Shown here: piece after piece, positions 806-25,516 of the stretch
How positions within the stretch are numbered: position 1 is the first letter of the stretch
Layout of the letters: each line of letters begins with the position of its first letter
Assembly: GCF_006345805.1 (NCBI RefSeq)
Contig: NW_021836081.1
Coordinates: forward strand, 1-25,516
Direction: 5' to 3'
DNA: 25,516 bases
From: Octopus sinensis
Lineage: Eukaryota
Notes under the pieces: model-generated
Database searches by the model: none
What the model was told of the DNA's origin: nothing
The model's input: the letters and a program-made list of their open reading frames with translations, nothing else
Program-made: the position numbers and the translations under genes

Positions 806-1470
806 TATCTGTGTGTCTGTGTGTTTGTGCATTTGTGTCTGTGTGTTTGTGCATTTGTGTCTGTGTTGTTTGTGCATTTGTGTCTGTGTGTTTGTGCATT
901 TGTGTCTGTGTGTTTTGTGCATTTGTGTCTGTGTGTTTGTGCATTTGTGTCTGTGTGTTTGTGCATTTGTGTCTGTGTGTTTGTGCATTTGTGTCTGTGT
1001 GTTTGTGCATTTGTGTCTGTGTGTTTGTATCTGTGTGTCTGTGTGTTTGTGCATTTGTGTCTGTGTGTTTGTGCATTTGTGTCTGTGTGTTTGTGCATTT
1101 GTGTCTGTGTGTTTGTGCATTTGTGTCTGTGTGTTTGTGCATTTGTGTCTGTGTGTTTGTGCATTTGTGTCTGTGTGTTTGTGCATTTGTGTCTGTGTGT
1201 TTGTGTGCATTTGTGTCGTGTGTTTGTGCATTTGTGTCTGTGTTTTTGTGCATTTGTGTCTGTGTGTGTTTGTGCATTTGTGTCTGTGTGTTTGTGCATT
1301 TGTGTCTGTGTGTTTGTGCATTTGTGTCTGTGTGTTTGTGCATTTGTGTCTGTGTGTTTGTGCATTTGTGTCTGTGTGTTTGTGCATTTGTGTCTGTGTG
1401 TTTGTGCATTTGTGTCTGTGTGTTTGTGCATTTGTGTCTGTGTGTTTGTGCATTTGTGTCTGTGTGTTTG
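806..1470. repeat. 22-bp minisatellite (gtgtctgtgtgtttgtgcattt), about 30 copies
   Basis: Direct reading; the unit contains no stop codons, which explains the stacked ORFs in several frames on both strands. Confidence 0.97.
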
Positions 1471-1805
1471 TACTTGTGTGTCTGTGTGTTGTTCTGCGAG
1501 TTTCGTCTGCGTGTCTATGTTTTTTAGGTTTCTGTGATTCTGAGTTTTCTTGTATCTGTTTGTCTATATTTCTGTGCTTTTGTATGTCTGTGTATTTGTG
1601 TGTCTGTGGGCCTGAATGTTTATGTACTTTTAAGTCCTTTACTGGTGAACCTACTGGTAAGTCTTCCCCGCATCTCGTCATAGGTTGGATTACCTCTTTC
1701 ATGACTTCCTCCTCTCTCTCTTTTTCTTGCTTTCACCTCCACAAACACACCGTCATGTTCTGTTATTTGTTTCTGTGTTTCTCCACCATTATATTCTCCT
1801 GGATA

Positions 1806-2197
1806 ATTTTGGATCTTTTGGGCTTTTTCTAGCGGTGTCATATGAAATTGTCACCCGTAATTATGACCCTAGTATCGACCTATTGCATTTTAATCTGTTT
1901 TAGGGTTAGGGTTAGGGGCGGGGGGAAGGGTATCTTTTTTTTTCTTCACAAATGTAAATAAACTCAATCAGTTTCTTAAAAGAGGGACATATTCATACGG
2001 CACAGAATGATTTTCAACTCAATAGACGCCAGTGATTTGTTGAAATTGCAGAAATTGAAGAAATTAAAGACCAAATATCTTACAAAGTATAGAATTTTCT
2101 CAATAAAGCCAAGAGAAAAAGATGTTTTATAAACACATTCTACCAGTATACGAAGTTTTAAATTTTTTAGTTACCTAGAAATTATGTTAATAACTGC
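1806..2197 (+). mobile_element. Dispersed ~400-bp repeat family E with TTAGGGTTAGGGTTAGG motif (non-autonomous element, class unknown)
   Basis: Reverse-complement copy at 6879-7292 and partial copy at 145-372. Confidence 0.75.
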
Positions 2198-2977: not shown

Positions 2978-3290
2978 GTGGAGGCGCAATAGCCCAGTGG
3001 TAGGCCAGCAGACTCGCAGTCGTACGATCGCGGTTTCGATTCCCAGATCGGGCATTGTGAGTGTTTATTGAGCGAAAAACACCTAAAGCTCCACGAGTCT
3101 CGGGCAGGGGATGGTGGTGATCCCTGCTGTACTCTTTCACCACAACTTTCTCTCACTCTTACTTCCTGTTTCTGTTGTACCTGTATTTCAAAGGGGCAAC
3201 CTTGTCACACTCTGTGTCACGCTGAATCTCCCCGAGAACTACGTTAAGGGTGCACATGTCTGTGGAGTGCTCAGCCACTTGCACATTAAT
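2978..3290 (+). mobile_element. tRNA-derived SINE family A, 3'-truncated
   Basis: A-box-like tagcccagtgg and B-box-like ggtttcgattccc; near-identical to 4109-4481 and 16727-17098. Confidence 0.88.
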
Positions 3291-4108: not shown

Positions 4109-4481
4109 GTGGAGGCGCAATGGCCCAGTGGTTAGGGCAGCGGTCGTAGGATCGCGGTTTCGATTCCCAGACCGGGCGTTGTGAGTGTTTATTGAGCGAA
4201 AACACCTAAAGCTCCACGAGGCTCCGGCAGGGATGGTGGTGATCCCTGCTGTACTCTTTCACCACAACTTTCTCTCACTCTTACTTGTTTCTGTTGTACC
4301 TGTATCTCAAAGGGCCGGCCTTGTCACTCTCTGTGTCACGCTGAATATCCCCGAGAACTACGTTAAGGGTACACGTGTCTGTGGAGTGCTCAGCCACTTA
4401 CACGTTAATTTCACGAGCAGGCTGTTCCGTTGATCGGATCAACCGGAACCCTCATCGTCGTAACCGACGGAGTGCTTCCAC
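4109..4481 (+). mobile_element. tRNA-derived SINE family A, full length
   Basis: A/B boxes; 3' end cgacggagtgcttccac shared with the 16727-17098 copy. Confidence 0.9.
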
Positions 4482-5903: not shown

Positions 5904-6233
<330 letters not shown>

Positions 6234-6689
6234 AGCGGAAAGCTCGACGACGTAAACAAAGGAGAAAAAAAATAACACAATTGAAATAATAAAAAAAAAA
6301 TATGGGTGCGCCTCCTAGCGGATGTTAGTCCTAAGTTGTTGGGTTAATAATCAGTGACACACGGTCACCGACGACAGTTCTCGAGAGGAACGGAAACAAG
6401 ATTACTGTTTGATATACAACTTAAAGGACCACACAGTGTGGAAACTGCGAAAAGGACGAGAGCGATATTACTAATTTGCTCCATGAAAATATAAAGAAGA
6501 ATCGGATTTCGAGTACAGAAGAAAGAAAGAAAACGAAAAATAATTTTAAATAATTTATTCGCTGTCTATTTATTTACGTTCATTAACGATTTGTTTATTT
6601 GTAATATTTAATATTTGGTGTTTTTATCGACCGTCGAAATGGAATCTGTAAGACTGTCATCAACGTTTTCGTCGTCATCATCATCAGCA

Positions 6690-6714
6690 ATGAAGTTACT
6701 GTTATTGTCACAAG
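6690..6714 (+). CDS. Probable first coding exon of the Cys-rich/sushi gene (MKLLLLSQ + 1 nt); an in-frame upstream ATG lies at 6639
   Basis: ATG AAG TTA CTG TTA TTG TCA CAA G followed by a consensus donor GTAAGT at 6715. Phase 1 matches the exon at 16558 and completes a signal-peptide-like MKLLLLSQVFSFMTVQISSA. The link spans a 9.8-kb intron and is inferred. Confidence 0.65.
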
Positions 6715-6878: not shown

Positions 6879-7292
6879 AGGATCTTTTCAGTTTGAACGG
6901 CAGTTTTTAAAAATAATTTCCACGTAACTAAACACTTTTAAACTTCGTATACTGGTAGAATTTGTTTATAAAACATCTTTTTCTCTTAGCTTTATTGAGA
7001 AAATTCTATAGTTTGTAAGGCATTTGTTGTTGTTTCTTTCAATTTCTGCAATTTCAACCAATCTCTGACGTTTATTGAGGTAAAAAACATTATGTGCCGT
7101 ATGAATATGTCCCTCGTTTAAGAAATAGATTGAGTTTATTTACATTTGTGAAGAAAAAAAGATACCCTTCACCCCGTCCCTAACCCTAACTCTTAAATAG
7201 ATTGAAATGCAATAGATCGATAATAGGGTCATAATTATGGGTGACAATTTCAATTGACACCGCTAGAAAAAACCGAAAAAATCCAAAAAAAT
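6879..7292 (-). mobile_element. Dispersed repeat family E, antisense copy
   Basis: Reverse complement of 1806-2197, including ccctaaccctaa. Confidence 0.8.
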
Positions 7293-7367
7293 ATACGAAA
7301 ATATTTATTCTGTGAAAACATTTGTATATTTTTATTTCAAAACATATGAATGCATATAAAACTAGTT

Positions 7368-8186
7368 AAGGCGGCGAACTGGCAGAAACATTAGCACGCC
7401 GGGCGAAATGCGTAGCCGTATTTCGTCTGCCGTTACGTTCTGAGTTCATATTCCGCCGAGGTCGACTTTGCCTTTCATCCTTTCGGGGTCGATAAATTAA
7501 GTACCAGTTACAACTGGGTCGATATAATCGACTTAATCCGTTTGTCTGTCCTTGTTTGTCTTCTCTGTGTTTAGCCCCTTGTGGGTAGTAAAGAAATAGG
7601 TATTTTCTGCCGCTGCGTTCTGAGTTCAAATTCCGCCTAGGTCAACTTTGCCTTTCAACCTTTCGGGGTCGATAAATTAAGTACCAGTTACGCACTGGGG
7701 TCGATATAATCGAGTTAATCCCTGTGTCTGTCCATGTTTGTCCTCTCTGTGTTTAGCCCCTTGTGGGTAGTAAAGAAATAGGTATTTCGTCTGCCGTTAC
7801 GTTCTGAGTTCAAATTCCGCTGAGGTCGACTTTGCCTTTCTTCCTTTCGGAGTCGATAAATTAAGTACCAGTTACGCACTGGGGTCGATGTAATTGACTT
7901 AATCCCTTTGTCTGTCCTTGTTTGTCCCCTCTGTGTTTAGTCCCTTGTGGGCAATAAAGAATTAAGAAACGTTAGCACGCCAGGTGAAATGCTTAGCAGA
8001 TATTTCGTCTGCCGTTACGTTCTGAGTTCAAATTCTGCCGAGGTCGACTTTGCCTTTCATCCTTTCGGGGTCGATAAATTAAGTACCAGTTACGCACTGG
8101 GGTCGATGTAATCGACATAATCCGTTTGTCTGTCCTTGTTTGTCCTCTCTATGTTTAGCCCCTTGTGGGCAATAAAGAAATAAGAA
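7368..8186 (+). mobile_element. SINE family D tandem array (4 units)
   Basis: Head aaggcggcga.ctggcagaaac followed by four ~182-bp bodies ending in taaagaa.ta. Confidence 0.9.
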
Positions 8187-8274
8187 TAGAACTATTTTCA
8201 TGTCATGTTTAAAAAGTTAAGCTTCTTTTCATAGCACAAAAAATATATAAATATATGAACAAAATTTTGACGCA

Positions 8275-9287
8275 TTTCCAACATTTTCTCAATATTTTAT
8301 ATGTGACTATGGCTTCTACCATATTGTGGGCTCTTATTTATTTGTCCTCGGGATTATCCTTCGACGGATTTCATTATAGAGTGTCCTAGCTACAATGTCG
8401 TGTCCCGTCGGTAGATAATGCCGTGATGACATTTGATGTGGGTGATATCTTCAGAGTGAACTCCACAAAGTTTGCATTGGTTGTCACATTTTACTGCTTT
8501 TCCTGCATATCTATCCCTTTTGTGCATCAGGTACTTAGTTGATATTTCCTGTTCCTGGATTGCAAACGCAGACCCTTCAAAGTGGGAGGTAGTAATCCGG
8601 CTATTGGTCCATGATAAACTGTTTTGATGATCGATGTTACTGTCATCACAGAGCTTTCTACTAACATATCCATGCATAGACTTCTGCTCATTTAAGCTCA
8701 TCCTTTCATCTGATGATACGTTGCGGTAGAGTCGTACGATTTCTTTGGGCATGTATTCTAGGTCATCAGACAAAGAGTGTTGCCCAAGGAGTTGCCTTCC
8801 AAGTCTTATGATGTTATCAGCCTCATGTATGCAAACTTGGTCAAAGGATGCACTTCGACACTTGATGGTTAAAAGATGTTGCTGAAGGGATATGATGCGA
8901 CATTCAAAGGCATTTTGGATCGAGGTTAAGCCTCTGCCGCCTTGTTTCCATTTTAGGTAGAAGCAGTTTACATCACTGTTTATGTAAAAATTATGTGTAC
9001 TTGTTAATATTTTTCGGGCTTTCACATCAATGGCTCGGATCTCATCAAGCATCCAATCAAGCAGCCCAAATGTTGGTATGAGTTCTGGCACTGCAAACAC
9101 ATTTTGGGCCACTGTTTTATTGAATGCAGAGAGTTCTGAAGTCCAAATTTTCTTTATTCGGCTGAGATATTCTTTAGTGACACGTGTTTTATTACAGGTG
9201 CCACTGTAAGATGTATTGTCACCTACCCCTAGATACCTGTTACATTCCTCGTCAGATGTAGGGGAAACAGTCAAATCATTAATGGAG
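8275..9287 (-). pseudogene. Decayed non-LTR retrotransposon fragment (R4/Dong-like: RT C-terminus, thumb region and CCHC knuckle)
   Basis: Translation contains RYLG, ELSAFNK..AQN..A.P, GGRGL, MHGY, EG..FAIQEQ.I.T and CKLC....E...HI. It then frameshifts into MSSRHYLPTGHDIVA (the RHD.V motif). Clade assignment is from motif memory. Confidence 0.85.
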
Positions 9288-9750
9288 ATGTATGTATGTA
9301 TTATGTATGTATTATGTATGTATGTACATATGTATGTATGCATGTATGTATGTATGTATGTATATATGTATGTATGTATTCATGTATGCATGTATGTATG
9401 TATGTATGTATGTATGTATGTATGTATTTATGTATGTATGTATGTATGTATGTGTGTATGTATGTATTATGTATGTATGCATGTATGTATGTATGCATGT
9501 ATGTATGTATTCATGTATGCATGTATGTATGTGTGTATGTATGTATGTATTATGTATGTATGTATGTATGTATGTATGTATGTATGTATGTACGTACGTA
9601 TGTATGTATGTATGTACGTATGTAAGTATGTATGTATGTACGTACGTATGTATGTATGTATGTATGTATATATATGTATGTATGTACGCACGTATGTATG
9701 TATGTATGTATGTATGTATGTATATGTATGTATGTACGCACGTATGTATG
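9288..9750. repeat. (ATGT)n microsatellite
   Basis: Direct reading; source of the MYVC ORFs. Confidence 0.97.
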
Positions 9751-10075
9751 CATTAAATAAACAACGATGGCTAAAAAACGTACACGCAGGACAGACAGAG
9801 AAGGCCCTAATTCTCCAGCAGTTATCAACGGAATGGCAATACTCAGCTCCATGCCTTTATTAATAATACGCATATGGGTGCCACCCGGAAAATTTGCGGA
9901 GAATTAGGGCTTCGAGCGAACAAAACGATACAAAATAAACAAACGTAATTTAAGACGATTGACACAGACGGAATAACTAGGTGGACGAGAAAAATATGGC
10001 CTTTCTGCCAAAATGACGAAAATGATGGGTAACGCCTGGAAGGAATCCTGAATGGATATAGCAAGTCGAATAGCA

Positions 10076-10989
10076 AGAGGCGAGCTGGCAGAAACGTTAG
10101 CATGCCGGGCGAAATGCTTAGAAGTATTTCGCCTGTCGTTACGTTCTGAGTTCAAATTCCGCCGAGGTCGACTTTGCCTTTCATCCTCTCGGGGTCAATA
10201 AATAAAGTACCAGTTACGCACTGGGGTCGATGTAATCGACTTAATCCCTTTGTCTGTCCTTGTTTGTCCCCTCTGTGTTTAGCCCCTTGTGGGTAGTAAA
10301 GAAATAGGCGTCTTTGTGCTAAAGGGCGGTGAACTGGCAGAAACGTTTGCACGCCGGGCGAAATGCGTAGCCGTATTTCGTCTGCCGTTACGTTCTGAGT
10401 TCAAATTCCGCCAAGGTCGACTTTGCCTTTCATCCTTTCGGGGTCGATAAATTAAGCACCAGTTACGCACTGGGGGTCTATGTAATCGATTTAATACCTA
10501 TGTCTGTCCTTGTTTGTCCCCTCTGTGTTTAGCCCCTTGTGGGTAGTAAAGAAATAGGTGTCTTTGTGCTAAAAGGCGGTGAGCTGGCAGAAACGCTTGC
10601 ACGCCGGGCGAAATGCGTAGCCGTATTTCGTCTGCCGTTACGTTCTGAGTTCAAATTCCGTCGAGGTCCACTTTGCCTTTCATCCTTTCGGGGTCGATAA
10701 ACTAAGTACCAGTTACGCACTGGGGTCGATATAATCGACTTAATCCGTTTGTCTGTCTTTGTTTGTCCCCTCCGTGTTTAGCCCCTTGTGGGTAATAAAG
10801 AAATAGATATTTCGTCTGTCGTTACGTTCTGAGTTCAAATTCCATCGAGGTCGACTTTGCCTTTCATCCTTTCGGGGTCGATAAATAAAGTACCAGTTTC
10901 GCACTGGATCGATGTAATCGACTTAATCCGTTTGTCTGTCTTTGTTTGTCCCCTCTACGTTTAGCCCCTTGTGGGTAGTAAAGAAATAT
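10076..10989 (+). mobile_element. SINE family D tandem array (3 headed units and 1 headless unit)
   Basis: Units 2 and 3 are both preceded by the same gtctttgtgctaaa spacer. Confidence 0.9.
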
Positions 10990-11814
10990 ATTAATAACTA
11001 CTACTGCTATTACTACTACTTACACCGCCACCACTAACAACAACAACAACAACAATAAAGGCGATGGTGAGGATGGTAGTAGTTTTAAGCATATAAACGT
11101 TGACTTGATTGAAATGTAAAATTTCTGGAAAACTGGTACAATACAATCCAATGAAAACAAAATATGTTGTAAACAAAATATAGCCAAACAATTATTCTTT
11201 TAGGCGCGCTCAAAGTAGATAATCCTTGACATGCCTATCAAACCGTGACGTCTATGCCGCACACTAATTGACGAAAATATCTCGTTGACAAGAGTGGAAT
11301 AAATGCTAACCAAATTGGCGCAATTACCAAACCGTGATATCTAAGCCACATCCTGCTTGGTCGAAATACAGTTAGAACTTTGCTGGCGCGCTCACAAAAA
11401 CATGACATCTAAGCCACATACTGATTGGTCAAAAATGCAGTTCGTAAGATTCAGGTTGCAAGAACTCATCGGAGGGTATTTAAAGGACAAATCTAACCAT
11501 TTCGCTAGCGTTGTCAGTTGTGGAACACGACTGTTACTACATAAACCTGACGATTGCGTAACACATGAAAGTACTAGTTTATTTTAAAATCGTTGGAATT
11601 TCATTGATTAATATATTCTTCTATACATAAGCTTACAAACTCGGATATATATTTCATGACCACGTGTTTTTGAAAGCAAGCTTCTTCACAATACCGCCAC
11701 ACGCCCGCCTTTAGACTTATTTGCTAATAATGTTTTCTCGCTGTTCTGTACAAAGTACTTACATGGTAATGTTAATTTTCATATAAATATAAATATATAT
11801 ATGTGTGTATGTGT

Positions 11815-12115
11815 GTGGAGGCACAAGTGTCCAGTGGTTAGGGCAGCGGACTCGCGGTCGTAGGATCGCGGTTTCGATTCCCAGACCGGGCGTTGCGAGT
11901 GTTTATTGAGCGAAAACATCTAAAGCTCTACGAGACTCCGGCAGGGGGTGGTGGCGATCCCTGGTGTACTCTTTCACCACAACTTTCTCTCACTCTTTCT
12001 TCTGTTGGCCTGCTCACTTAGCCAGCGGGGTGGCGCCATTTGAAGACTAAAACAATGTGAAGCGCATTGTGACCAGCGACGTATAGCAACATCTGATATC
12101 CTGGTCGGTCACGGT
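11815..12115 (+). mobile_element. SINE family A variant with a different 3' half
   Basis: The first ~185 bp match family A; the sequence diverges after tctctcactctt. Confidence 0.8.
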
Positions 12116-16557: not shown

Positions 16558-16675
16558 TGTTTTCCTTCATGACTGTGCAAATATCGAGTGCAGAGAATCA
16601 AGGATGTCCTGATAGTCTTGTGTCATGTCCGTGTGGGAGAGATCTCATGAAAGAGGTCGATATTCCGATTGAGAT
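16558..16675 (+). CDS. Exon 2: end of signal peptide and start of Factor C-like Cys-rich domain (FSFMTVQISSAENQGCPDSLVSCPCGRDLMKEVDIPIE)
   Basis: Acceptor tttcacatctttttcAG at 16556-57 and donor GTAAG at 16676. Ends in phase 2 (AT), which joins the G of exon 3 to give Met. Confidence 0.85.
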
Positions 16676-16726
16676 GTAAGTATGCGATTATTTTGCACTC
16701 ATTCACGCACAGCGATACACTCCTAT

Positions 16727-17098
16727 GCCCAGTGGTTAGGGCAGCGGACTCGCGGTCGTAGGATCGCGGTTTCGATTCCCAGACCGGGCGTTGTGAGTGT
16801 TTATTGAGCGAAAACTCCTAAAGTTCCACGAGGCTCCGGCAGGGGATGGTGGTGATCCCTGCTGTACTCTTTCACCACAGCTTTCTCTCACTCTTACTTC
16901 CTGTTTCTGTTGTACCTGTATTTCAAAGGGCCGGCCTTGTCACTCTCTGTGTCACGCTGAATATCCCCGAGAACTACGTTAAGGGTACACGTGTCTATGG
17001 AGTGCTCAGCCACTTGCACGTTAATTTCACCAGCAGGCTGTTCCGTTGATCGGATCAACCGGAACCCTCGTCGTCGTAACCGACGGAGTGCTTCCACC
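16727..17098 (+). mobile_element. SINE family A with a 10-bp target-site duplication
   Basis: acactcctat flanks both sides (16717-16726 and 17099-17108). Confidence 0.92.
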
Positions 17099-17104
17099 AC
17101 ACTC

Positions 17105-17139
<35 letters not shown>

Positions 17140-17289
17140 CATACATATATATATACATATACATACATATATTCACATTTAAATAATGAGGGAGATAAAT
17201 TGAATATTAATTTAATTAATATCAATTTAAAACCAGTTGCCTAACATACAAAAATCTGAAAAATCAGAGAAAATTCCAATACGTGTGTA

Positions 17290-17738
17290 TATTTTAAGGG
17301 CTAAAAACCACTATGTGGACAGCCATATGCTAGAAATAGATCACCTACGATCAAGCTACAAAGAAAGAATGTTCTCTAGAGAAAATTTCAGCGGACACCA
17401 GAACAATAGGCGGGCAAGACAGATGAAATTTATATAAAAATCAAGAATTAATCGCATACCGGTTCCGTCTATTAACGAATAGATCACTTACGTAATCCTT
17501 CGTCCGTTGGACTCATCAGTACGGACGAAGGATTACATAAGTGATCTATTCGTTAATAGATGAAACCGGTATGTTACTAATTCTTGATTTTTATATAATT
17601 TTCATCTGTCTTGCCCGCCTATTGTTCTGGTGTCCGCTGAATTTTTCTCTAGAGAACATTCTTCCTTTGTAGTTTGATCGTAGGTGATCTATTTCTAGCA
17701 TATGGCTGTCCACATAATGGTTTTTAGCCCTCAAAATA
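17290..17738. repeat. ~450-bp fold-back palindrome (arms ~218 bp, roughly 94% matched, 13-nt loop)
   Basis: The ORF track shows the same peptide on both strands (17237+ and 17591-); apex cgtccgt-tggactcatcagt-acggacg. Confidence 0.95.
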
Positions 17739-17939
17739 AATACATACATATATTCATGTATATATTTCTGCATGTTTATATGTTCATATGAATAGATATA
17801 CATACATGTATGCATGTATATATTTCTGTATGTATATTTAAACGTATTATATACGATGTATATATGTATGTATGCTTGTATTGTATGCGTGTATGCATGC
17901 ATATCTCAAATTATAGCCTACATGTATTTATTTATCTGT

Positions 17940-17945
17940 CTATCG

Positions 17946-18029
<84 letters not shown>

Positions 18030-18065
18030 GCTAGCTAGCTAGCTAGCTAGCTAGATAGCTAGATA
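17940..18065. repeat. (CTAT)n/(CTAG)n microsatellite
   Basis: Direct reading. Confidence 0.95.
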
Positions 18066-18376
18066 GATATATTTACAAACTCATATACGCACACACACAC
18101 AGACTCTCTCTCTTTCTCCCTCTCTTCCATGCCAACTTTCTCTCTTACACAATCTCTCTCTCCCTCTCCCCTATTCTTTCTTAATTTTACTCTAAATCTT
18201 TTCCAGTTCGAGTCTATCTTCTTCCACATACACACACACATACACACACACACACATACACAATCCGTCTCCATCTCTCACTATCTCTCCCTTTATTTCT
18301 TTCTCACGCTCTCTGTCTCTTACTCTCTCTCTCTCTCTCACTCTTTCTCTCTAAACCTATATGTTTCTCCTTCTAG

Positions 18377-18534
18377 GTGTCGAAATTTCACATTCGGATG
18401 GTTTTTCCCGAAGTTAAGATGTCTGACTTGTCACTCCCTTATACCGGAAGCCGTCTGTAGACCTTACAAACGCTGTACAGATTGCAGACCTGATGGTATT
18501 AGCTCCTGTATCCCCTACAAAAAAGACCGCCAAA
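18377..18534 (+). CDS. Exon 3: remainder of Cys-rich domain (CRNFTFGWFFPKLRCLTCHSLIPEAVCRPYKRCTDCRPDGISSCIPYKKDRQ)
   Basis: Acceptor tttctccttctAG at 18375-76 and donor GTAAG at 18535. Open frame with 7 Cys; phases 2/1 match both neighbours. Confidence 0.9.
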
Positions 18535-18704
18535 GTAAGCTGTTGATATTTTCTTGTTAAAAAATGACTGACTGAGATGAGATTGTGTATTGTGTGTGAA
18601 CGAGGAGAATTGGGTAGGGATGTTGTGTCACAGGTCGGTGGTTCGAATCCCTGTCACCGTGGCAGTGAGATGGTAGATAAAACAAACAACTTAAAACAAA
18701 TAAG

Positions 18705-19359
18705 CCGGCGAGCTGGCAGAAACGTTAGCACGCCGGGCGAAATGCTTAGCGGTTTTTCGTCTGCCGTTACGTTCTGAGTTCAAATTCCGCCGACGTCGAC
18801 TTTGCTTTTCATCCTTACGGGGTCGATAAATTAAGTACCTATTTCTTTACTACCCACGAGGGGCTAAACACAGAGAGGACAAACAAACGGATTAAGTCGA
18901 TTACATCGACCCCAGTGCGTAACTGGTACTTATTTAATCGACCCCGAAAGGATGAAAGGCAAATTCGACCTCGGCGGAATTTGAACTCAGAACGTAACGG
19001 CAGACGAAATACGGCTACGCATATCGCCCGTTGTGCTAACGTTTCTGCCAGCTCGCCGATAATTTAAGTACCGGTTACGCACTGGGGTCGATGTAATCGA
19101 CTTAATCCGTTTGTCTGTTCTTGTTTGTCTCCACCGTGTTTAGCCCTTTGTGGGTAGTAAAGAAATAGGTATTTCGTCTGCCGTTACGTTCTGAGTTCAA
19201 ATTCCGTCGAGGTCGACTTTGCCTTTCATCCTTTCGGGGTCGATTAAATAAGTACCAGTTATGCACTGGTGTCGATATAATCGATTTAATCCGTCTGTCT
19301 GTCCTTGTTTGTCCCAGCTGTGTGTAGCCCCCTTGTGGGCAGTAAAGAAATAAGAAATA
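18705..19359 (+). mobile_element. SINE family D cluster: sense copy interrupted by an antisense copy (18840-19058), followed by a headless unit
   Basis: The 14-bp duplication ataa(a/t)ttaagtacc flanks the antisense copy. Confidence 0.9.
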
Positions 19360-19427: not shown

Positions 19428-20010
19428 CACACCATCACCACCATCACTACCACCAAAACCACCACCACCACCACCACCACCACCAAAACCACCACCACCA
19501 CCACCACCACCACTACCACCACCACCACCAAAACCACCACCACCACCACCACCACCAAAACCACCACTACCACCAAAACCACCACCACCACCACCACCAC
19601 CACCAAAACCACCACTACCAAAACCACCACCACCACCACCACCAAAACCACCACCACCACCACCACCAAAACCACCACCACCACCAAAACCACCACTACC
19701 ACCACTACCACCAAAACCACCACCACCAAAACCACCACCACCACCAAAACCACCACCACAACCACCACCACCCCCAAAACCACCACCACCCCCCAACCCC
19801 CCCAAAACCACCACCACCAAAACCACCATCACCGACACCACCAACAACAACAACACCGCCAACACCACGACTACCATTATTACTACTATTATCATTACTA
19901 CCACTACTAGCACCACCACCACCAACACTACCACAAACAACACCATTACTACCACCACCGCTACCTCTACCAAGATTACTACTAAAATTACCATCACCAC
20001 CACCACCACT
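19428..20010. repeat. Compound (ACC)n trinucleotide tract with AAA/ACT interruptions
   Basis: Direct reading. Confidence 0.95.
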
Positions 20011-20316
20011 ACCACCTTGATTGCTACATTCAGACCGTCGTTACCAATCCCACACCCCACCCACCTATAACATCAACCCACCAGAACCACCCCAGCATAA
20101 AAAACTGTAACCATAACATTTCCAGTCAGTATTAAAATGGCCTCACAACTAACATAACTACCACTATCACTGCTACTACTACAACCACCACACCTACCAT
20201 GACTACCACACTTAATACTACAGCCACCACTTTGTCCACATTTTGTCCACCACTAAATATATCTTGTTTCATTTATTAAACAATATTTTTAATTAATAAA
20301 ATTCTTCAATTTCCAG

Positions 20317-20491
20317 TTCGAAGAAATCATTGTCCTCGTCCACTTCTACTACCAAACGGTCACATCACTGTGGACAAGGAACCACAACCAGGGTCAGTGG
20401 TGAAATACAAATGTGCTAACCGGTATGTCTTGAAAGGACAGCCAAAACGTACCTGCGGAGGGGATTTTCGCTGGATCGGCGGTCCACCCAC
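20317..20491 (+). CDS. Exon 4: sushi/CCP domain 1 (RRNHCPRPLLLPNGHITVDKEPQPGSVVKYKCANRYVLKGQPKRTCGGDFRWIGGPP)
   Basis: Acceptor ttcttcaatttccAG and donor GTAAG at 20492. Shows the CCP pattern C-P..P.NG..G..V.Y.C...Y.L.G...RTC....W...PP. Confidence 0.93.
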
Positions 20492-20544: not shown

Positions 20545-20762
20545 AACGTTAGCACGCCGGGCGAAATGCGTAGCCGTATTTCGTCTGCCGTTATGTTCTG
20601 GGTTCAAATTCCGCCGAGGTCGACTTTGCCTTTCATCCATCCTTTCGGGATCGATAAATTAAGTACCAGTTACGCACTGGAGTCGATGTAATCGACTTAA
20701 TACGTTTGTCTGTCCTTGTTTGTCCCCTCTGTGTTTAGCCCCTTGTGGGTAGTAAAGAAATA
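20545..20762 (+). mobile_element. SINE family D single copy, slightly 5'-truncated
   Basis: Matches the family D consensus seen at 7368. Confidence 0.88.
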
Positions 20763-20820
20763 TATATATGTATATATAGTAACAACCGCACATACTCAAT
20801 GTTTCGTCACACACACACAC

Positions 20821-22670: not shown

Positions 22671-22763
22671 GTGTTTGAAAACCATGTGTCTCCCGCCTGC
22701 AGGACTGAAACACGGCCGTATCCACTACAGCAGAAACCAGCTTGTTTTCAATGTCAATGATAG
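22671..22763 (+). CDS. Exon 5: last Cys of CCP1 and first half of CCP2 (CLKTMCLPPAGLKHGRIHYSRNQLVFNVND)
   Basis: Acceptor tctgttgtttcAG at 22669-70 and donor GTAAG at 22764. Phases 2/2 match and it supplies the missing fourth Cys of CCP1. Confidence 0.9.
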
Positions 22764-24525: not shown

Positions 24526-24629
24526 AGTATCCTACTCGTGTGACGACGATTACGTGATTTATGGCGAATCTGTAAGAATCTGTGGGGCTGATGGTAAATG
24601 GTCAGGGTCGGAACCGTTTTGCAGTAAAG
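24526..24629 (+). CDS. Exon 6: second half of CCP2 (VSYSCDDDYVIYGESVRICGADGKWSGSEPFCSK)
   Basis: Acceptor tttttattctatttAG at 24524-25 and donor GTAAAT at 24630. Canonical CCP C-terminal motif Y.C...Y...G...R.C...G.WSG..P.C. Confidence 0.93.
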
Positions 24630-24708
24630 GTAAATTCTTGAAAAATAAAGCCTTTAAACTTTTTCCTCAAATATGTCTTTTTCATTCTCTTAACTCGCTT
24701 AACACTAG

Positions 24709-24764
24709 GATTACTCACTTGTTCCAACGTGCTAAAGCACACGACGCGTCCCCCGGTCCAGTAG
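24709..24764 (+). CDS. Possible short terminal exon (GLLTCSNVLKHTTRPPVQ*)
   Basis: A 79-nt GT-AG intron (24630-24708) with a pyrimidine tract and TTAAC branch-like motifs would join it in phase 1; stop at 24762-64. No homology support. Confidence 0.25.
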
Positions 24765-25389
24765 CTGAAACCCCATTATTACGATCGTATCTGCAATGCC
24801 CTGACTGCTGAGCTAGGTGCCTCGACACTCATATATATGATGATGGACATAGATAGCTACAAACCGTTCGGTCTGGTGATCCCGTCGTCTTTTAGAAGAT
24901 AGTAGGAGTTCTCTGCCCTGCTTGCAACATGTACCGAATGCAAATTGCATCGATAACTAGCTAGAGGAGGCTCTTCCTGGAGTTAAATTCGGTAGTAAAA
25001 TGAGTATTTTTTCCGATGGCCGGATAACTGAAGAGATGGCGGCGTGGATTTCCGCCCCGACATCCGAAACTCGGAGTTTTATCATGGCTACCGAATAATT
25101 GTCACATATTAATTTACAGATAAATTCCTCTATTTACATAATATTGAGGTCTCTTTCATTCTTTTGCTGTCTTACCATTTCTATCAATATATATATATAT
25201 ATATATATAATATTAATTCGAGACAAAACCACTATTTTGCAAAACAAACAAGAAAGACTTAATCAATACATAAACATTTTTAATATAAAGAAATAATATA
25301 TATATATATATTATATATGCATGTATGTATGTATGTAGTGTATATTACACACACAAATATATATATATATATATATATATATCTATATA

Positions 25390-25421
<32 letters not shown>

Positions 25422-25516
25422 AATAAACAGGGAGTATAACTCCAAACTTACAGGGAAAAATTCAATTTAGTATTAAATCAAATTTCACAGTATCAATATA
25501 TAAAATATATAATAGT

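What the first reader, a model, noticed from the sequence alone, without database searches (positions are those of the whole stretch)
16558..18534. Horseshoe-crab Factor C-type Cys-rich (LPS-sensor) domain in a probable cephalopod secreted protein
Spliced exons 2-3 give C-x6-C-x-C-G-x13-C-x13-C-x2-C-x8-C-x5-C-x2-C-x7-C. The N-terminal Cys-rich region of Limulus/Tachypleus Factor C, as I recall it (CDETRFECKCG..P...C....W...CKPC.L.....C.KYKRCQEC..G..SC), has C-x6-C-x-C-G-x12-C-x9-C-x2-C-x8-C-x5-C-x2-C-x6-C. All 10 Cys align, with shared CG, P, W, YKRC and G..SC. This region is the established LPS-recognition module of Factor C and, to my knowledge, is regarded mainly as an arthropod (chelicerate) feature. 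Finding it behind a signal peptide and ahead of tandem CCP domains suggests an unrecognised molluscan pattern-recognition or complement-like family. The domain is split over two exons and is invisible to the ORF track.
Basis: partly seen in the sequence, partly recalled or inferred. Interest (0 to 1): 0.9.

Follow-up and report, generated by a model that had tools for sequence, protein, structure and literature searches.

The report
Octopus Factor C-like protease, N-terminal module
Two exons of an Octopus sinensis gene encode a ten-cysteine module that is very probably the same module that heads horseshoe-crab clotting Factor C, and the gene is the front half of a shortened Factor C-like protease; whether it senses bacterial LPS is untested, and the known LPS-binding motif is not conserved.

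Summary
Exons 16558-16675 and 18377-18534 have canonical splice sites and join into a 10-Cys module behind a signal peptide. My six-exon splice translates exactly to RefSeq XP_029657581.2 ("complement C2-like", Octopus sinensis).

Homology to the Factor C N-terminus is well supported, mainly by context. Sequence signal alone is marginal: BLASTP 31 bits, hhalign 89-91%, HMMER profiles about 22 bits, and one decoy reached 26 bits. Stronger evidence:
- The Tachypleus Factor C gene has an intron at the same codon and phase, just before Cys4, followed by an exon of nearly the same size.
- The full-length homologues (Argonauta hians, annotated "limulus clotting factor C-like", and an RNA contig) continue into three CCPs and a trypsin domain closer to Factor C than to any solved protease.
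- Their best database relative is a hemichordate "clotting factor C-like" protein with a textbook Factor C module.

The window holds only the 5' half, because the scaffold ends after CCP2. The LPS-sensor reading is not supported: the Arg-Trp-Arg motif is absent, and the EGF, LCCL and lectin domains are missing. I rate this a divergent, reduced Factor C-family member of moderate interest.

The parts
6639..6714 (+). Exon 1 coding part: MESVRLSSTFSSSSSSAMKLLLLSQ plus the first base of the next codon. It holds two possible start codons (M1, M18) and the start of the signal peptide.
   Evidence: Exact match to P0001 residues 1-25, donor GTAAGT
16558..16675 (+). Exon 2: end of the signal peptide (VFSFMTVQISSA|ENQG) and Cys1-Cys3 of the Factor C-type module (CPDSLVSCPCG...DIPIE), ending in phase 2.
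   Evidence: aligns to Factor C residues 33-55
16676..18376 (+). Intron 2. It splits the codon immediately before Cys4 after its second base, the same place and phase as in the Tachypleus Factor C gene and the Argonauta gene.
   Evidence: L003, L002. It holds an interspersed-repeat copy, microsatellites and a 461-bp hairpin.
18377..18534 (+). Exon 3 (158 nt): Cys4-Cys10 of the module (CRNFTFGWFFPKLRCLTCHSLIPEAVCRPYKRCTDCRPDGISSC) plus a linker, ending in phase 1.
   Evidence: The corresponding Tachypleus exon is 161 nt with the same phases.
20317..20491 (+). Exon 4: CCP/Sushi domain 1, entire.
22671..22763 (+). Exon 5: first half of CCP/Sushi domain 2.
24526..24629 (+). Exon 6: second half of CCP/Sushi domain 2, with a good donor GTAAAT at 24630.
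   Evidence: Pfam Sushi E=1.8e-8
24630..24811 (+). Read-through tail of the RefSeq model (GKFLKNKAF...QCPDC, then stop). It is probably intron sequence, because the Argonauta counterpart splices here into CCP3 and the protease exons.
   Evidence: No CCP3 or protease exon is found before the scaffold ends at 25516.

Best explanation
The window is a whole 25.5-kb unplaced scaffold of Octopus sinensis. It carries the 5' half of a gene for a secreted, modular serine-protease zymogen of the Factor C family. The plan is: signal peptide, Factor C-type 10-Cys N-terminal module (exons 2-3), then CCP1 and CCP2. The scaffold ends before CCP3 and the trypsin-like domain that the full-length cephalopod homologues have.

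Shown: the exon structure, the module, the conserved intron, and the Factor C affinity of the homologues.

Inferred: the protein circulates as a zymogen. Its non-catalytic N-terminal part (Cys-rich module plus CCPs) docks it on a target surface or partner. Clustering there promotes activating cleavage just before IIGG/ILNG. The active enzyme then cuts after basic residues (Asp189 is kept) to drive a humoral defence or clotting-like or complement-like step.

What the module binds is unknown. Its Cys4-Cys5 loop is still aromatic and basic (RNFTFGWFFPKLR), so lipid or LPS binding is possible but not indicated by the known motif.
For: - Identity of the gene: (spliced CDS equals XP_029657581.2).
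- Real Factor C obtained by exact look-up (Q26422 = P0017).
- Module similarity: BLASTP's best HSP of the 88-aa octopus peptide on the 1019-aa Factor C is its residues 33-95, at 31.2 bits, pairwise E=4e-6, all 10 Cys aligned.
- Smith-Waterman score exceeded all 5000 shuffles that keep the Cys fixed for octopus and Argonauta, and all but 4 of 5000 for P0003.
- hhalign gave 89% (E 2.3e-6), and 91.4% (E 8.9e-7) with Ptychodera added.
- HMMER profiles gave about 22 bits in both directions.
- In a set of 100 modular proteases, the Factor C and cephalopod modules are reciprocal best hits over the full length.
- Independent of sequence score: the intron lies at the identical codon and phase before Cys4 in octopus, Argonauta and Tachypleus Factor C, and the next exon is 158 versus 161 nt with the same end phase.
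- Context: P0002 and P0003 are Cys-rich module, 3 Sushi and Trypsin. They align to Factor C with E=5e-52 and 4e-56.
- The P0002 protease domain scores 147 bits to Factor C against at most 103 bits to any PDB protease.
- A profile of the two homologues finds the Ptychodera 'clotting factor C-like' protein as best relative (417 bits; next best 250 bits for a poly-protease, then PAMR1 at about 220). That protein has a textbook Factor C N-terminus and matches Q26422 at E=4e-138.
- The catalytic His/Asp/Ser and Asp189 are conserved in the homologues.
Against: - Sequence evidence for the module alone is weak. The exhaustive phmmer search of 1.84 billion representatives did not bring up Factor C at E<=0.001.
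- Single-sequence HMMER gives only 13-15 bits after bias correction, no better than spurious PDB hits.
- An unrelated insect protease reached 26 bits in BLASTP.
- P0003 against Ptychodera is not significant.
- There is no Pfam model or solved structure for the module, and the AF2 model was unusable at pLDDT 38.7, so the fold and disulfide topology are untested.
- Three of nine inter-Cys loops differ in length.
- The EGF, LCCL and C-type lectin domains and the RWR motif of Factor C are absent.
- The protease half is not in the window, so for O. sinensis itself it is inferred from homologues.
- In the homologues the oxyanion-hole Gly193 is Tyr or Phe and the Cys191-Cys220 disulfide is lost, so full activity is not assured.
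Confidence: 0.8

Rival explanations
1. LPS sensor: the module is a conserved LPS/lipid A recognition unit, and the protein is a Gram-negative pattern-recognition receptor.
For: The module is homologous to the region that binds LPS in Tachypleus Factor C (PMC10672452). The Cys4-Cys5 loop remains rich in aromatic and basic residues, and module pI is 7.6-8.6.
Against: The basic-aromatic-basic tripeptide Arg-Trp-Arg, whose mutation abolishes LPS binding in Factor C, is not conserved in any of the three cephalopod sequences; in P0003 even the Trp is lost. The loop is 4 residues longer. The EGF-like domain that takes part in binding is absent. In Carcinoscorpius the high-affinity sites were mapped to Sushi 1 and 3 instead. 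There are no expression or binding data.
Confidence: 0.2
2. Chance or convergent resemblance: a generic disulfide-rich linker whose Cys spacing happens to resemble Factor C, with no common origin.
For: HMMER scores are at noise level for single sequences. A decoy reached 26 bits in BLASTP. No structure is available.
Against: Fixed-Cys shuffles were almost never as good. The modules are reciprocal best full-length hits among 100 modular proteases. Intron position and phase are identical and the exon size is matched. The module has the same position directly after the signal peptide. The rest of the protein is specifically Factor C-like.
Confidence: 0.08
3. A stand-alone short secreted protein (module plus two CCPs, no protease) as in the RefSeq model, or a truncated or duplicated gene fragment on an unplaced scaffold.
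For: The RefSeq model XP_029657581.2 ends at a stop at 24809-24811 after reading through the exon 6 donor. No protease exon lies in the window.
Against: Exon 6 ends at a good donor (GTAAAT) exactly where Argonauta splices to CCP3. The 60-residue tail has no similarity to anything and lies in repeat-rich sequence. The scaffold ends only 887 bp later, while the matching Argonauta intron is about 1.3 kb. Both full-length homologues have the protease.
Confidence: 0.12
4. A complement C2/factor B homologue, as the RefSeq product name says, or a MASP/C1r/C1s homologue.
For: CCP repeats followed (in homologues) by a trypsin-like domain. MASP-1/2, C1r and C1s are the closest solved CCP-CCP-protease structures.
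Against: No von Willebrand A domain in the homologues, and no CUB-EGF-CUB (Pfam). Scores to Factor C (277 bits) and to Ptychodera factor C-like (342-417 bits) far exceed MASP-1 (141 bits). The N-terminal module occurs in neither C2/Bf nor MASP.
Confidence: 0.03

Closest known systems
Horseshoe-crab clotting Factor C (Q26422 Carcinoscorpius; Tachypleus isoforms)
   Same: Signal peptide followed directly by a 10-Cys module with 6 of 9 inter-Cys spacings identical, plus CG, Pro, Trp and YKRC. The intron lies in the same codon and phase before Cys4. CCP repeats follow. In homologues, the C-terminal trypsin domain is 37-38% identical and shares YLGK, DDxYVQ, DIALI, PICLP, MFCAG and WxLEGIVSWG. The residue before the mature N-terminus is non-basic.
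   Different: No EGF-like domain, LCCL domain or C-type lectin domain. Three CCPs instead of five. The RWR LPS tripeptide is absent. The Cys4-Cys5 loop is 4 residues longer. In homologues Gly193 is Tyr or Phe and the Cys191-Cys220 disulfide is lost. The proteins are about 570 aa instead of 1019 aa.
Ptychodera flava 'clotting factor C-like isoform X2' (P0032, hemichordate)
   Same: Best database relative of the cephalopod proteins (417 bits). Same order of module, CCPs and protease. Shares CPD at the start of the module. It also lacks the LCCL and lectin domains.
   Different: It keeps a near-canonical Factor C module (CVYFYRWRPYCKACDD, CPKYQHCLEC), the EGF-like domain and seven CCPs. Its protease domain is 49% identical to Factor C, against 37-38% for the cephalopods.
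MASP-1/2, C1r, C1s (complement initiating proteases)
   Same: CCP-CCP-trypsin C-terminal unit; a zymogen activated on a recognition complex; the closest solved structures.
   Different: Their N-terminus is CUB-EGF-CUB, not the 10-Cys module, and similarity scores are clearly lower.
Complement C2 / factor B (the RefSeq product name)
   Same: N-terminal CCP repeats and a C-terminal serine protease.
   Different: C2/Bf have a von Willebrand A domain and no Cys-rich N-terminal module. The name reflects CCP similarity only.
PAMR1 (CUB-EGF-CCP-CCP-protease-like)
   Same: Third-best relative in the big search, at about 220 bits after a 250-bit poly-protease hit. It shares the CCP-CCP-protease unit.
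   Different: It has a different N-terminus and lacks the 10-Cys module. RefSeq annotates it as an 'inactive serine protease'.

Membership tests
Factor C family (Limulus clotting factor C-like proteases) | N-terminal 10-Cys module directly after the signal peptide (C-x6-C-x-CG...C-x2-C-x8-C-x5-C-x2-C) | tested here: met
   All 10 Cys plus Gly and Pro are invariant across octopus, Argonauta, P0003 and horseshoe-crab sequences; the Ptychodera module aligns with all 10 Cys in separate comparisons. Six of 9 spacings are identical. BLASTP, hhalign and shuffles are positive, but HMMER is weak.
Factor C family (Limulus clotting factor C-like proteases) | Gene structure: phase-2 intron in the codon preceding Cys4, followed by an exon of about 160 nt ending in phase 1 | tested here: met
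   Octopus AT|G, Argonauta AA|., Tachypleus CA|A. Exons are 158 and 161 nt.
Factor C family (Limulus clotting factor C-like proteases) | Arg-Trp-Arg LPS-binding tripeptide in the Cys4-Cys5 loop | tested here: not met
   GWF, NWY and EHF in the three cephalopod sequences, against RWR in horseshoe crabs and Ptychodera.
Factor C family (Limulus clotting factor C-like proteases) | EGF-like domain after the module | tested here: not met
   Exon 3 runs through a 13-residue linker straight into CCP1. There is no EGF hit in P0001-P0003.
Factor C family (Limulus clotting factor C-like proteases) | LCCL and C-type lectin domains between the CCPs | tested here: not met
   Absent from P0002 and P0003. Also absent from the Ptychodera relative, so they may be chelicerate additions.
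Factor C family (Limulus clotting factor C-like proteases) | Tandem CCP repeats before the protease | tested here: met
   Two CCPs in the window and three in the full-length homologues.
Factor C family (Limulus clotting factor C-like proteases) | C-terminal trypsin-like domain specifically related to Factor C | tested here: inconclusive
   Not present in the window, because the scaffold ends. Met in homologues: 147 bits to Factor C against at most 103 bits to any PDB protease, and the best relative is Ptychodera factor C-like.
Factor C family (Limulus clotting factor C-like proteases) | LPS-triggered autocatalytic activation | not testable with these tools
   Needs recombinant protein and biochemical assays.
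Complement C2 / factor B | von Willebrand factor A domain between the CCPs and the protease | tested here: not met
   No VWA hit in P0002 or P0003.
MASP / C1r / C1s | CUB-EGF-CUB N-terminal region | tested here: not met
   No CUB or EGF in P0001-P0003. The N-terminus is the 10-Cys module.

The most novel reading that the evidence does not exclude
The 10-Cys module is an ancient bilaterian surface- or lipid-recognition unit, present in chelicerates, a hemichordate and cephalopods. In cephalopods a minimal 'module-CCP3-protease' version acts as the self-activating sensor at the top of a still undescribed haemolymph protease cascade, either complement-like C3 activation or clotting. It would use a binding chemistry different from the RWR motif.
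Probability: 0.15. Interest if true: 0.75.

Novelty: new variant of a known kind. Interest (0 to 1): 0.5.

Why it matters
Factor C is the endotoxin sensor behind the LAL and recombinant Factor C tests, and it is usually discussed as a chelicerate protein. Its N-terminal module has no Pfam model and no solved structure.

This work finds the module, with the same intron, in cephalopods. A near-canonical copy also occurs in a hemichordate. Together these suggest that the Factor C lineage predates the protostome-deuterostome split. The LCCL and lectin domains may then be lineage-specific additions, although only two outgroup lineages were sampled.

The finding gives cephalopod immunology a concrete candidate for an initiating humoral protease. 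It also gives structural biologists a small set of divergent sequences with which to define the module. It corrects a misleading RefSeq product name ('complement C2-like').

Tried and rejected
- Pfam and PDB sequence searches of the module found nothing useful.
- The word-indexed homologue search with the octopus module, and with the Factor C N-terminus, returned nothing. The index evidently lacks P0001, P0003 and Q26422, although they are in the collection. These nulls are therefore uninformative, and two capped searches were lost.
- A brute-force search for exon 1 was swamped by ATGT microsatellites. Exon 1 was placed only after P0001 was retrieved.
- The Factor C sequence could not be found in papers or supplements. 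It was instead verified by exact look-up of my recalled sequence.
- AlphaFold2 on a 6-sequence alignment gave pLDDT 38.7, so no fold search was attempted.
- The species of the RNA contig SRR24189497 could not be established.
- The Ptychodera genomic locus was not on record, so its intron position is untested.
- Literature searches found no paper on a molluscan Factor C module. One of them was badly framed.
- A cephalopod venom preprint that mentions Sushi domains concerns unrelated SE-CTX-like proteins.
- No tRNA genes or Rfam families were found in the window.
Full report
WHAT THE WINDOW IS. The window is eukaryotic and repeat-rich, with 25-49% GC per kb. It equals a whole 25,516-bp contig of Octopus sinensis. 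An exhaustive phmmer search of 1.84 billion representative proteins with the spliced peptide returned a 100% identical 301-aa protein, P0001. An exact look-up identifies P0001 as XP_029657581.2, 'complement C2-like [Octopus sinensis]', whose longest contig is 25,516 bp. Six + strand exons translate exactly to that protein: 6639-6714, 16558-16675, 18377-18534, 20317-20491, 22671-22763 and 24526-24811. Every internal junction is AG/GT.

OBSERVATION. The finding's coordinates are the outer limits of exons 2 and 3. Exon 2 supplies the end of a signal peptide (MKLLLLSQVFSFMTVQISSA|ENQG, if the second Met is used) and Cys1-3. Exon 3 supplies Cys4-10. One complete CCP exon and a two-exon CCP follow.

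A REAL FACTOR C FOR COMPARISON. Neither papers nor supplements gave the sequence, and the PDB holds no Factor C. An exact-sequence look-up of the 1019-aa sequence I recalled found it in the collection as Q26422, Limulus clotting factor C of Carcinoscorpius rotundicauda (P0017). Tachypleus isoforms sit in the same cluster. All comparisons below therefore use database sequences, not memory.

SEQUENCE TESTS OF THE MODULE: POSITIVE RESULTS.
- The best BLASTP HSP of the octopus peptide on Factor C falls on residues 33-95, its N-terminal Cys-rich region. It scores 31.2 bits with pairwise E=4e-6, 32% identity and all 10 Cys aligned. The same holds against the Ptychodera protein (27.7 bits).
- Smith-Waterman scores beat all 5000 shuffles of Factor C in which the Cys were held fixed. 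This held for octopus and Argonauta (z about 6), with 4 of 5000 reaching the real score for P0003. Non-Cys residues therefore contribute.
- hhalign of a 3-sequence cephalopod profile against Factor C profiles gives 89% and 91.4% probability.
- In a set of 100 modular serine proteases with CUB, EGF, Sushi, LRR, kringle and TSP domains, every Factor C-family protein is hit over the full 68-aa module. The reverse searches return only the cephalopod modules above about 17 bits.

SEQUENCE TESTS OF THE MODULE: WEAK POINTS.
- The 1.84-billion-protein search found only three clusters at E<=0.001: self, Argonauta and an RNA-derived protein. It did not find Factor C.
- After composition correction, HMMER gives 13-15 bits for single sequences and about 22 bits for profiles in either direction. 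That is E about 1e-3 at the size of the PDB.
- One unrelated insect protease reached 26 bits in BLASTP with misaligned Cys.
- There is no Pfam model and no solved relative.
- The AF2 model was useless at pLDDT 38.7.
On sequence alone I would call the relationship probable, not proven.

GENE-STRUCTURE EVIDENCE. I fetched the Tachypleus tridentatus Factor C locus (L003) and mapped its first exons. Its Cys-rich region is interrupted by an intron inside the codon that immediately precedes Cys4, after the second base (…AAA CA|gtaagt … ttatag|A TGC…). In octopus the split is …GAG AT|gtaagt … tctag|G TGT…, and in Argonauta …AAA AA|gttagt. All three share the same codon and the same phase. The next exon is 161 nt in Tachypleus and 158 nt in octopus, and both end in phase 1. 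With roughly 200 possible positions in the module, an exact coincidence is unlikely. This evidence is independent of residue similarity.

THE REST OF THE PROTEIN. P0002 (Argonauta hians GAB1610081.1, named 'limulus clotting factor C-like', 64% identical in the module) and P0003 (569 aa, 36% identical) are full length. P0003 comes from an uninterrupted 1961-nt RNA contig, L001.
- Both have the plan signal peptide, module, three Sushi domains and Trypsin.
- The Argonauta gene has the same exon plan as the window, followed by two CCP3 exons and four protease exons.
- tblastn finds none of those later exons in the window, which ends 887 bp after exon 6. The octopus model is therefore truncated by the scaffold, and its 60-residue tail is read-through of a good donor.
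- The homologues align to Factor C over CCP-CCP-protease with E=5e-52 and 4e-56.
- The protease domain alone scores 147 bits to Factor C, against at most 103 bits to any of 177,635 PDB sequences, including MASPs, C1r/s and clotting proteases.
- A profile of P0002 plus P0003 searched against the 5.8-billion-protein index gave as best relative 'clotting factor C-like isoform X2' of the hemichordate Ptychodera flava (417 bits). The next hits were a poly-protease at 250 bits and PAMR1 at about 220 bits.
- That Ptychodera protein has a textbook Factor C N-terminus (CPDETQQCQCG…CVYFYRWRPYCKACDD…CPKYQHCLEC), an EGF-like domain, seven Sushi domains and a protease. It has no LCCL or lectin domain, and it matches Q26422 end to end at E=4e-138.

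WHAT IS NOT SUPPORTED.
- A review (PMC10672452) states that in Tachypleus LPS binds the Cys-rich region through Arg36-Trp37-Arg38, while in Carcinoscorpius high-affinity sites were mapped to Sushi 1 and 3. The tripeptide is at positions 36-38 of the mature horseshoe-crab sequences and is kept in Ptychodera.
- The tripeptide is GWF, NWY and EHF in the three cephalopod proteins, within a loop 4 residues longer.
- The EGF, LCCL and lectin domains are missing.
The module is therefore homologous, but LPS recognition cannot be transferred.

MECHANISM.
Shown: a secretory leader, the module and the CCPs in the window. In the homologues, an intact catalytic triad and Asp189.
Inferred: the protein is a zymogen whose non-catalytic arm docks it on a surface or partner. 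It is activated by cleavage before IIGG or ILNG. The preceding residue is Asn or Pro rather than Arg/Lys, which, from my own knowledge of Factor C, recalls the unusual Phe-Ile autoactivation site there. The enzyme then cleaves after basic residues.
Caveat: Gly193 is replaced by Tyr or Phe and the Cys191-Cys220 disulfide is lost. Catalytic efficiency may therefore be low or dependent on a cofactor.

RIVALS.
- Chance resemblance is disfavoured by the intron, the context and the reciprocal-hit results.
- The RefSeq reading (C2-like) fails for lack of a VWA domain.
- MASP-like fails for lack of CUB-EGF-CUB.
- A truly short protein, or a fragmentary duplicate on this unplaced scaffold, cannot be excluded without reads.

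NOVELTY. The protein is already in RefSeq, and the Argonauta counterpart carries an automatic 'factor C-like' name. The papers I could search contain no description of a molluscan Factor C module. I rate it a reduced, divergent variant of a known family. Its interest is moderate and lies mainly in evolution (a Factor C lineage older than chelicerates) and in providing a candidate initiating protease for cephalopod humoral immunity.

LIMITS. The alignments are shallow, with three cephalopod sequences and two Factor C lineages. There is no structure, no expression data and no phylogeny. The species of P0003 is unknown. The word index of the homologue search is incomplete, so taxonomic absence elsewhere cannot be claimed.

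Noticed in passing
window 17284-17744 (intron 2): A 461-bp near-perfect hairpin: two 224-nt arms, 94% complementary, with a 13-nt loop. It looks like a foldback or MITE-like insertion inside the intron that splits the module.
   Followed up: partly
window 1791-2193 and 6905-7304: Inverted repeats of about 400 nt, 87-88% complementary (pairs I6, I12, I14). They bracket a 4.7-kb segment that contains exon 1 (6639-6714) and the presumed promoter.
   Followed up: no
window 7268-8284, 9974-10993, 18602-19356, 20638-20767: An interspersed repeat family with a unit of about 180-250 bp and at least 11 copies. It occurs in tandem clusters and in both orientations in introns 1, 3 and 4. A second family (2991-3290, 4114-4409, 11828-12002, 16726-17025) has a copy in intron 2. 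ARAGORN and Rfam find nothing.
   Followed up: partly
window 812-1490; 19430-20016; 9288-9750; 5904-6232; 2539-2879: Long simple repeats: a 22-bp minisatellite of about 31 copies, a (CACCACCAC)n array of about 590 bp, and (ATGT)n, (ATAG)n and (TA)n arrays. They produce long spurious Cys-rich ORFs.
   Followed up: no
window 24630-24811 and scaffold end 25516: The RefSeq model reads through the exon 6 donor (GTAAAT) to a stop at 24809-24811. This adds 60 residues with no similarity to anything, probably an artefact of the scaffold ending before CCP3.
   Followed up: yes
window 6639-6714: There are two in-frame start candidates. M1 is followed by a Ser-rich stretch (SSTFSSSSSS), and M18 begins a textbook signal peptide (MKLLLLSQ...). 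Argonauta has the same Ser-rich leader.
   Followed up: no
P0002 / P0003 protease domains (L002 20579-27225; L001): In the cephalopod homologues the oxyanion-hole Gly193 is Tyr or Phe, the Cys191-Cys220 disulfide is absent, and the residue before the mature N-terminus (IIGG/ILNG) is Asn or Pro rather than Arg/Lys. The catalytic triad and Asp189 are kept.
   Followed up: partly
P0032 (Ptychodera flava, XP 'clotting factor C-like isoform X2'): A hemichordate protein with a near-canonical Factor C N-terminal module including RWR, an EGF-like domain, seven Sushi domains and a protease 49% identical to Factor C, but no LCCL or lectin domain. This suggests the family is not chelicerate-specific.
   Followed up: partly
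tool behaviour: The word index of the search for homologous proteins does not contain P0001, P0003 or Q26422, although all are in the underlying collection. 'No homologue found' from that tool is therefore not evidence of absence for these eukaryotic proteins.
   Followed up: yes
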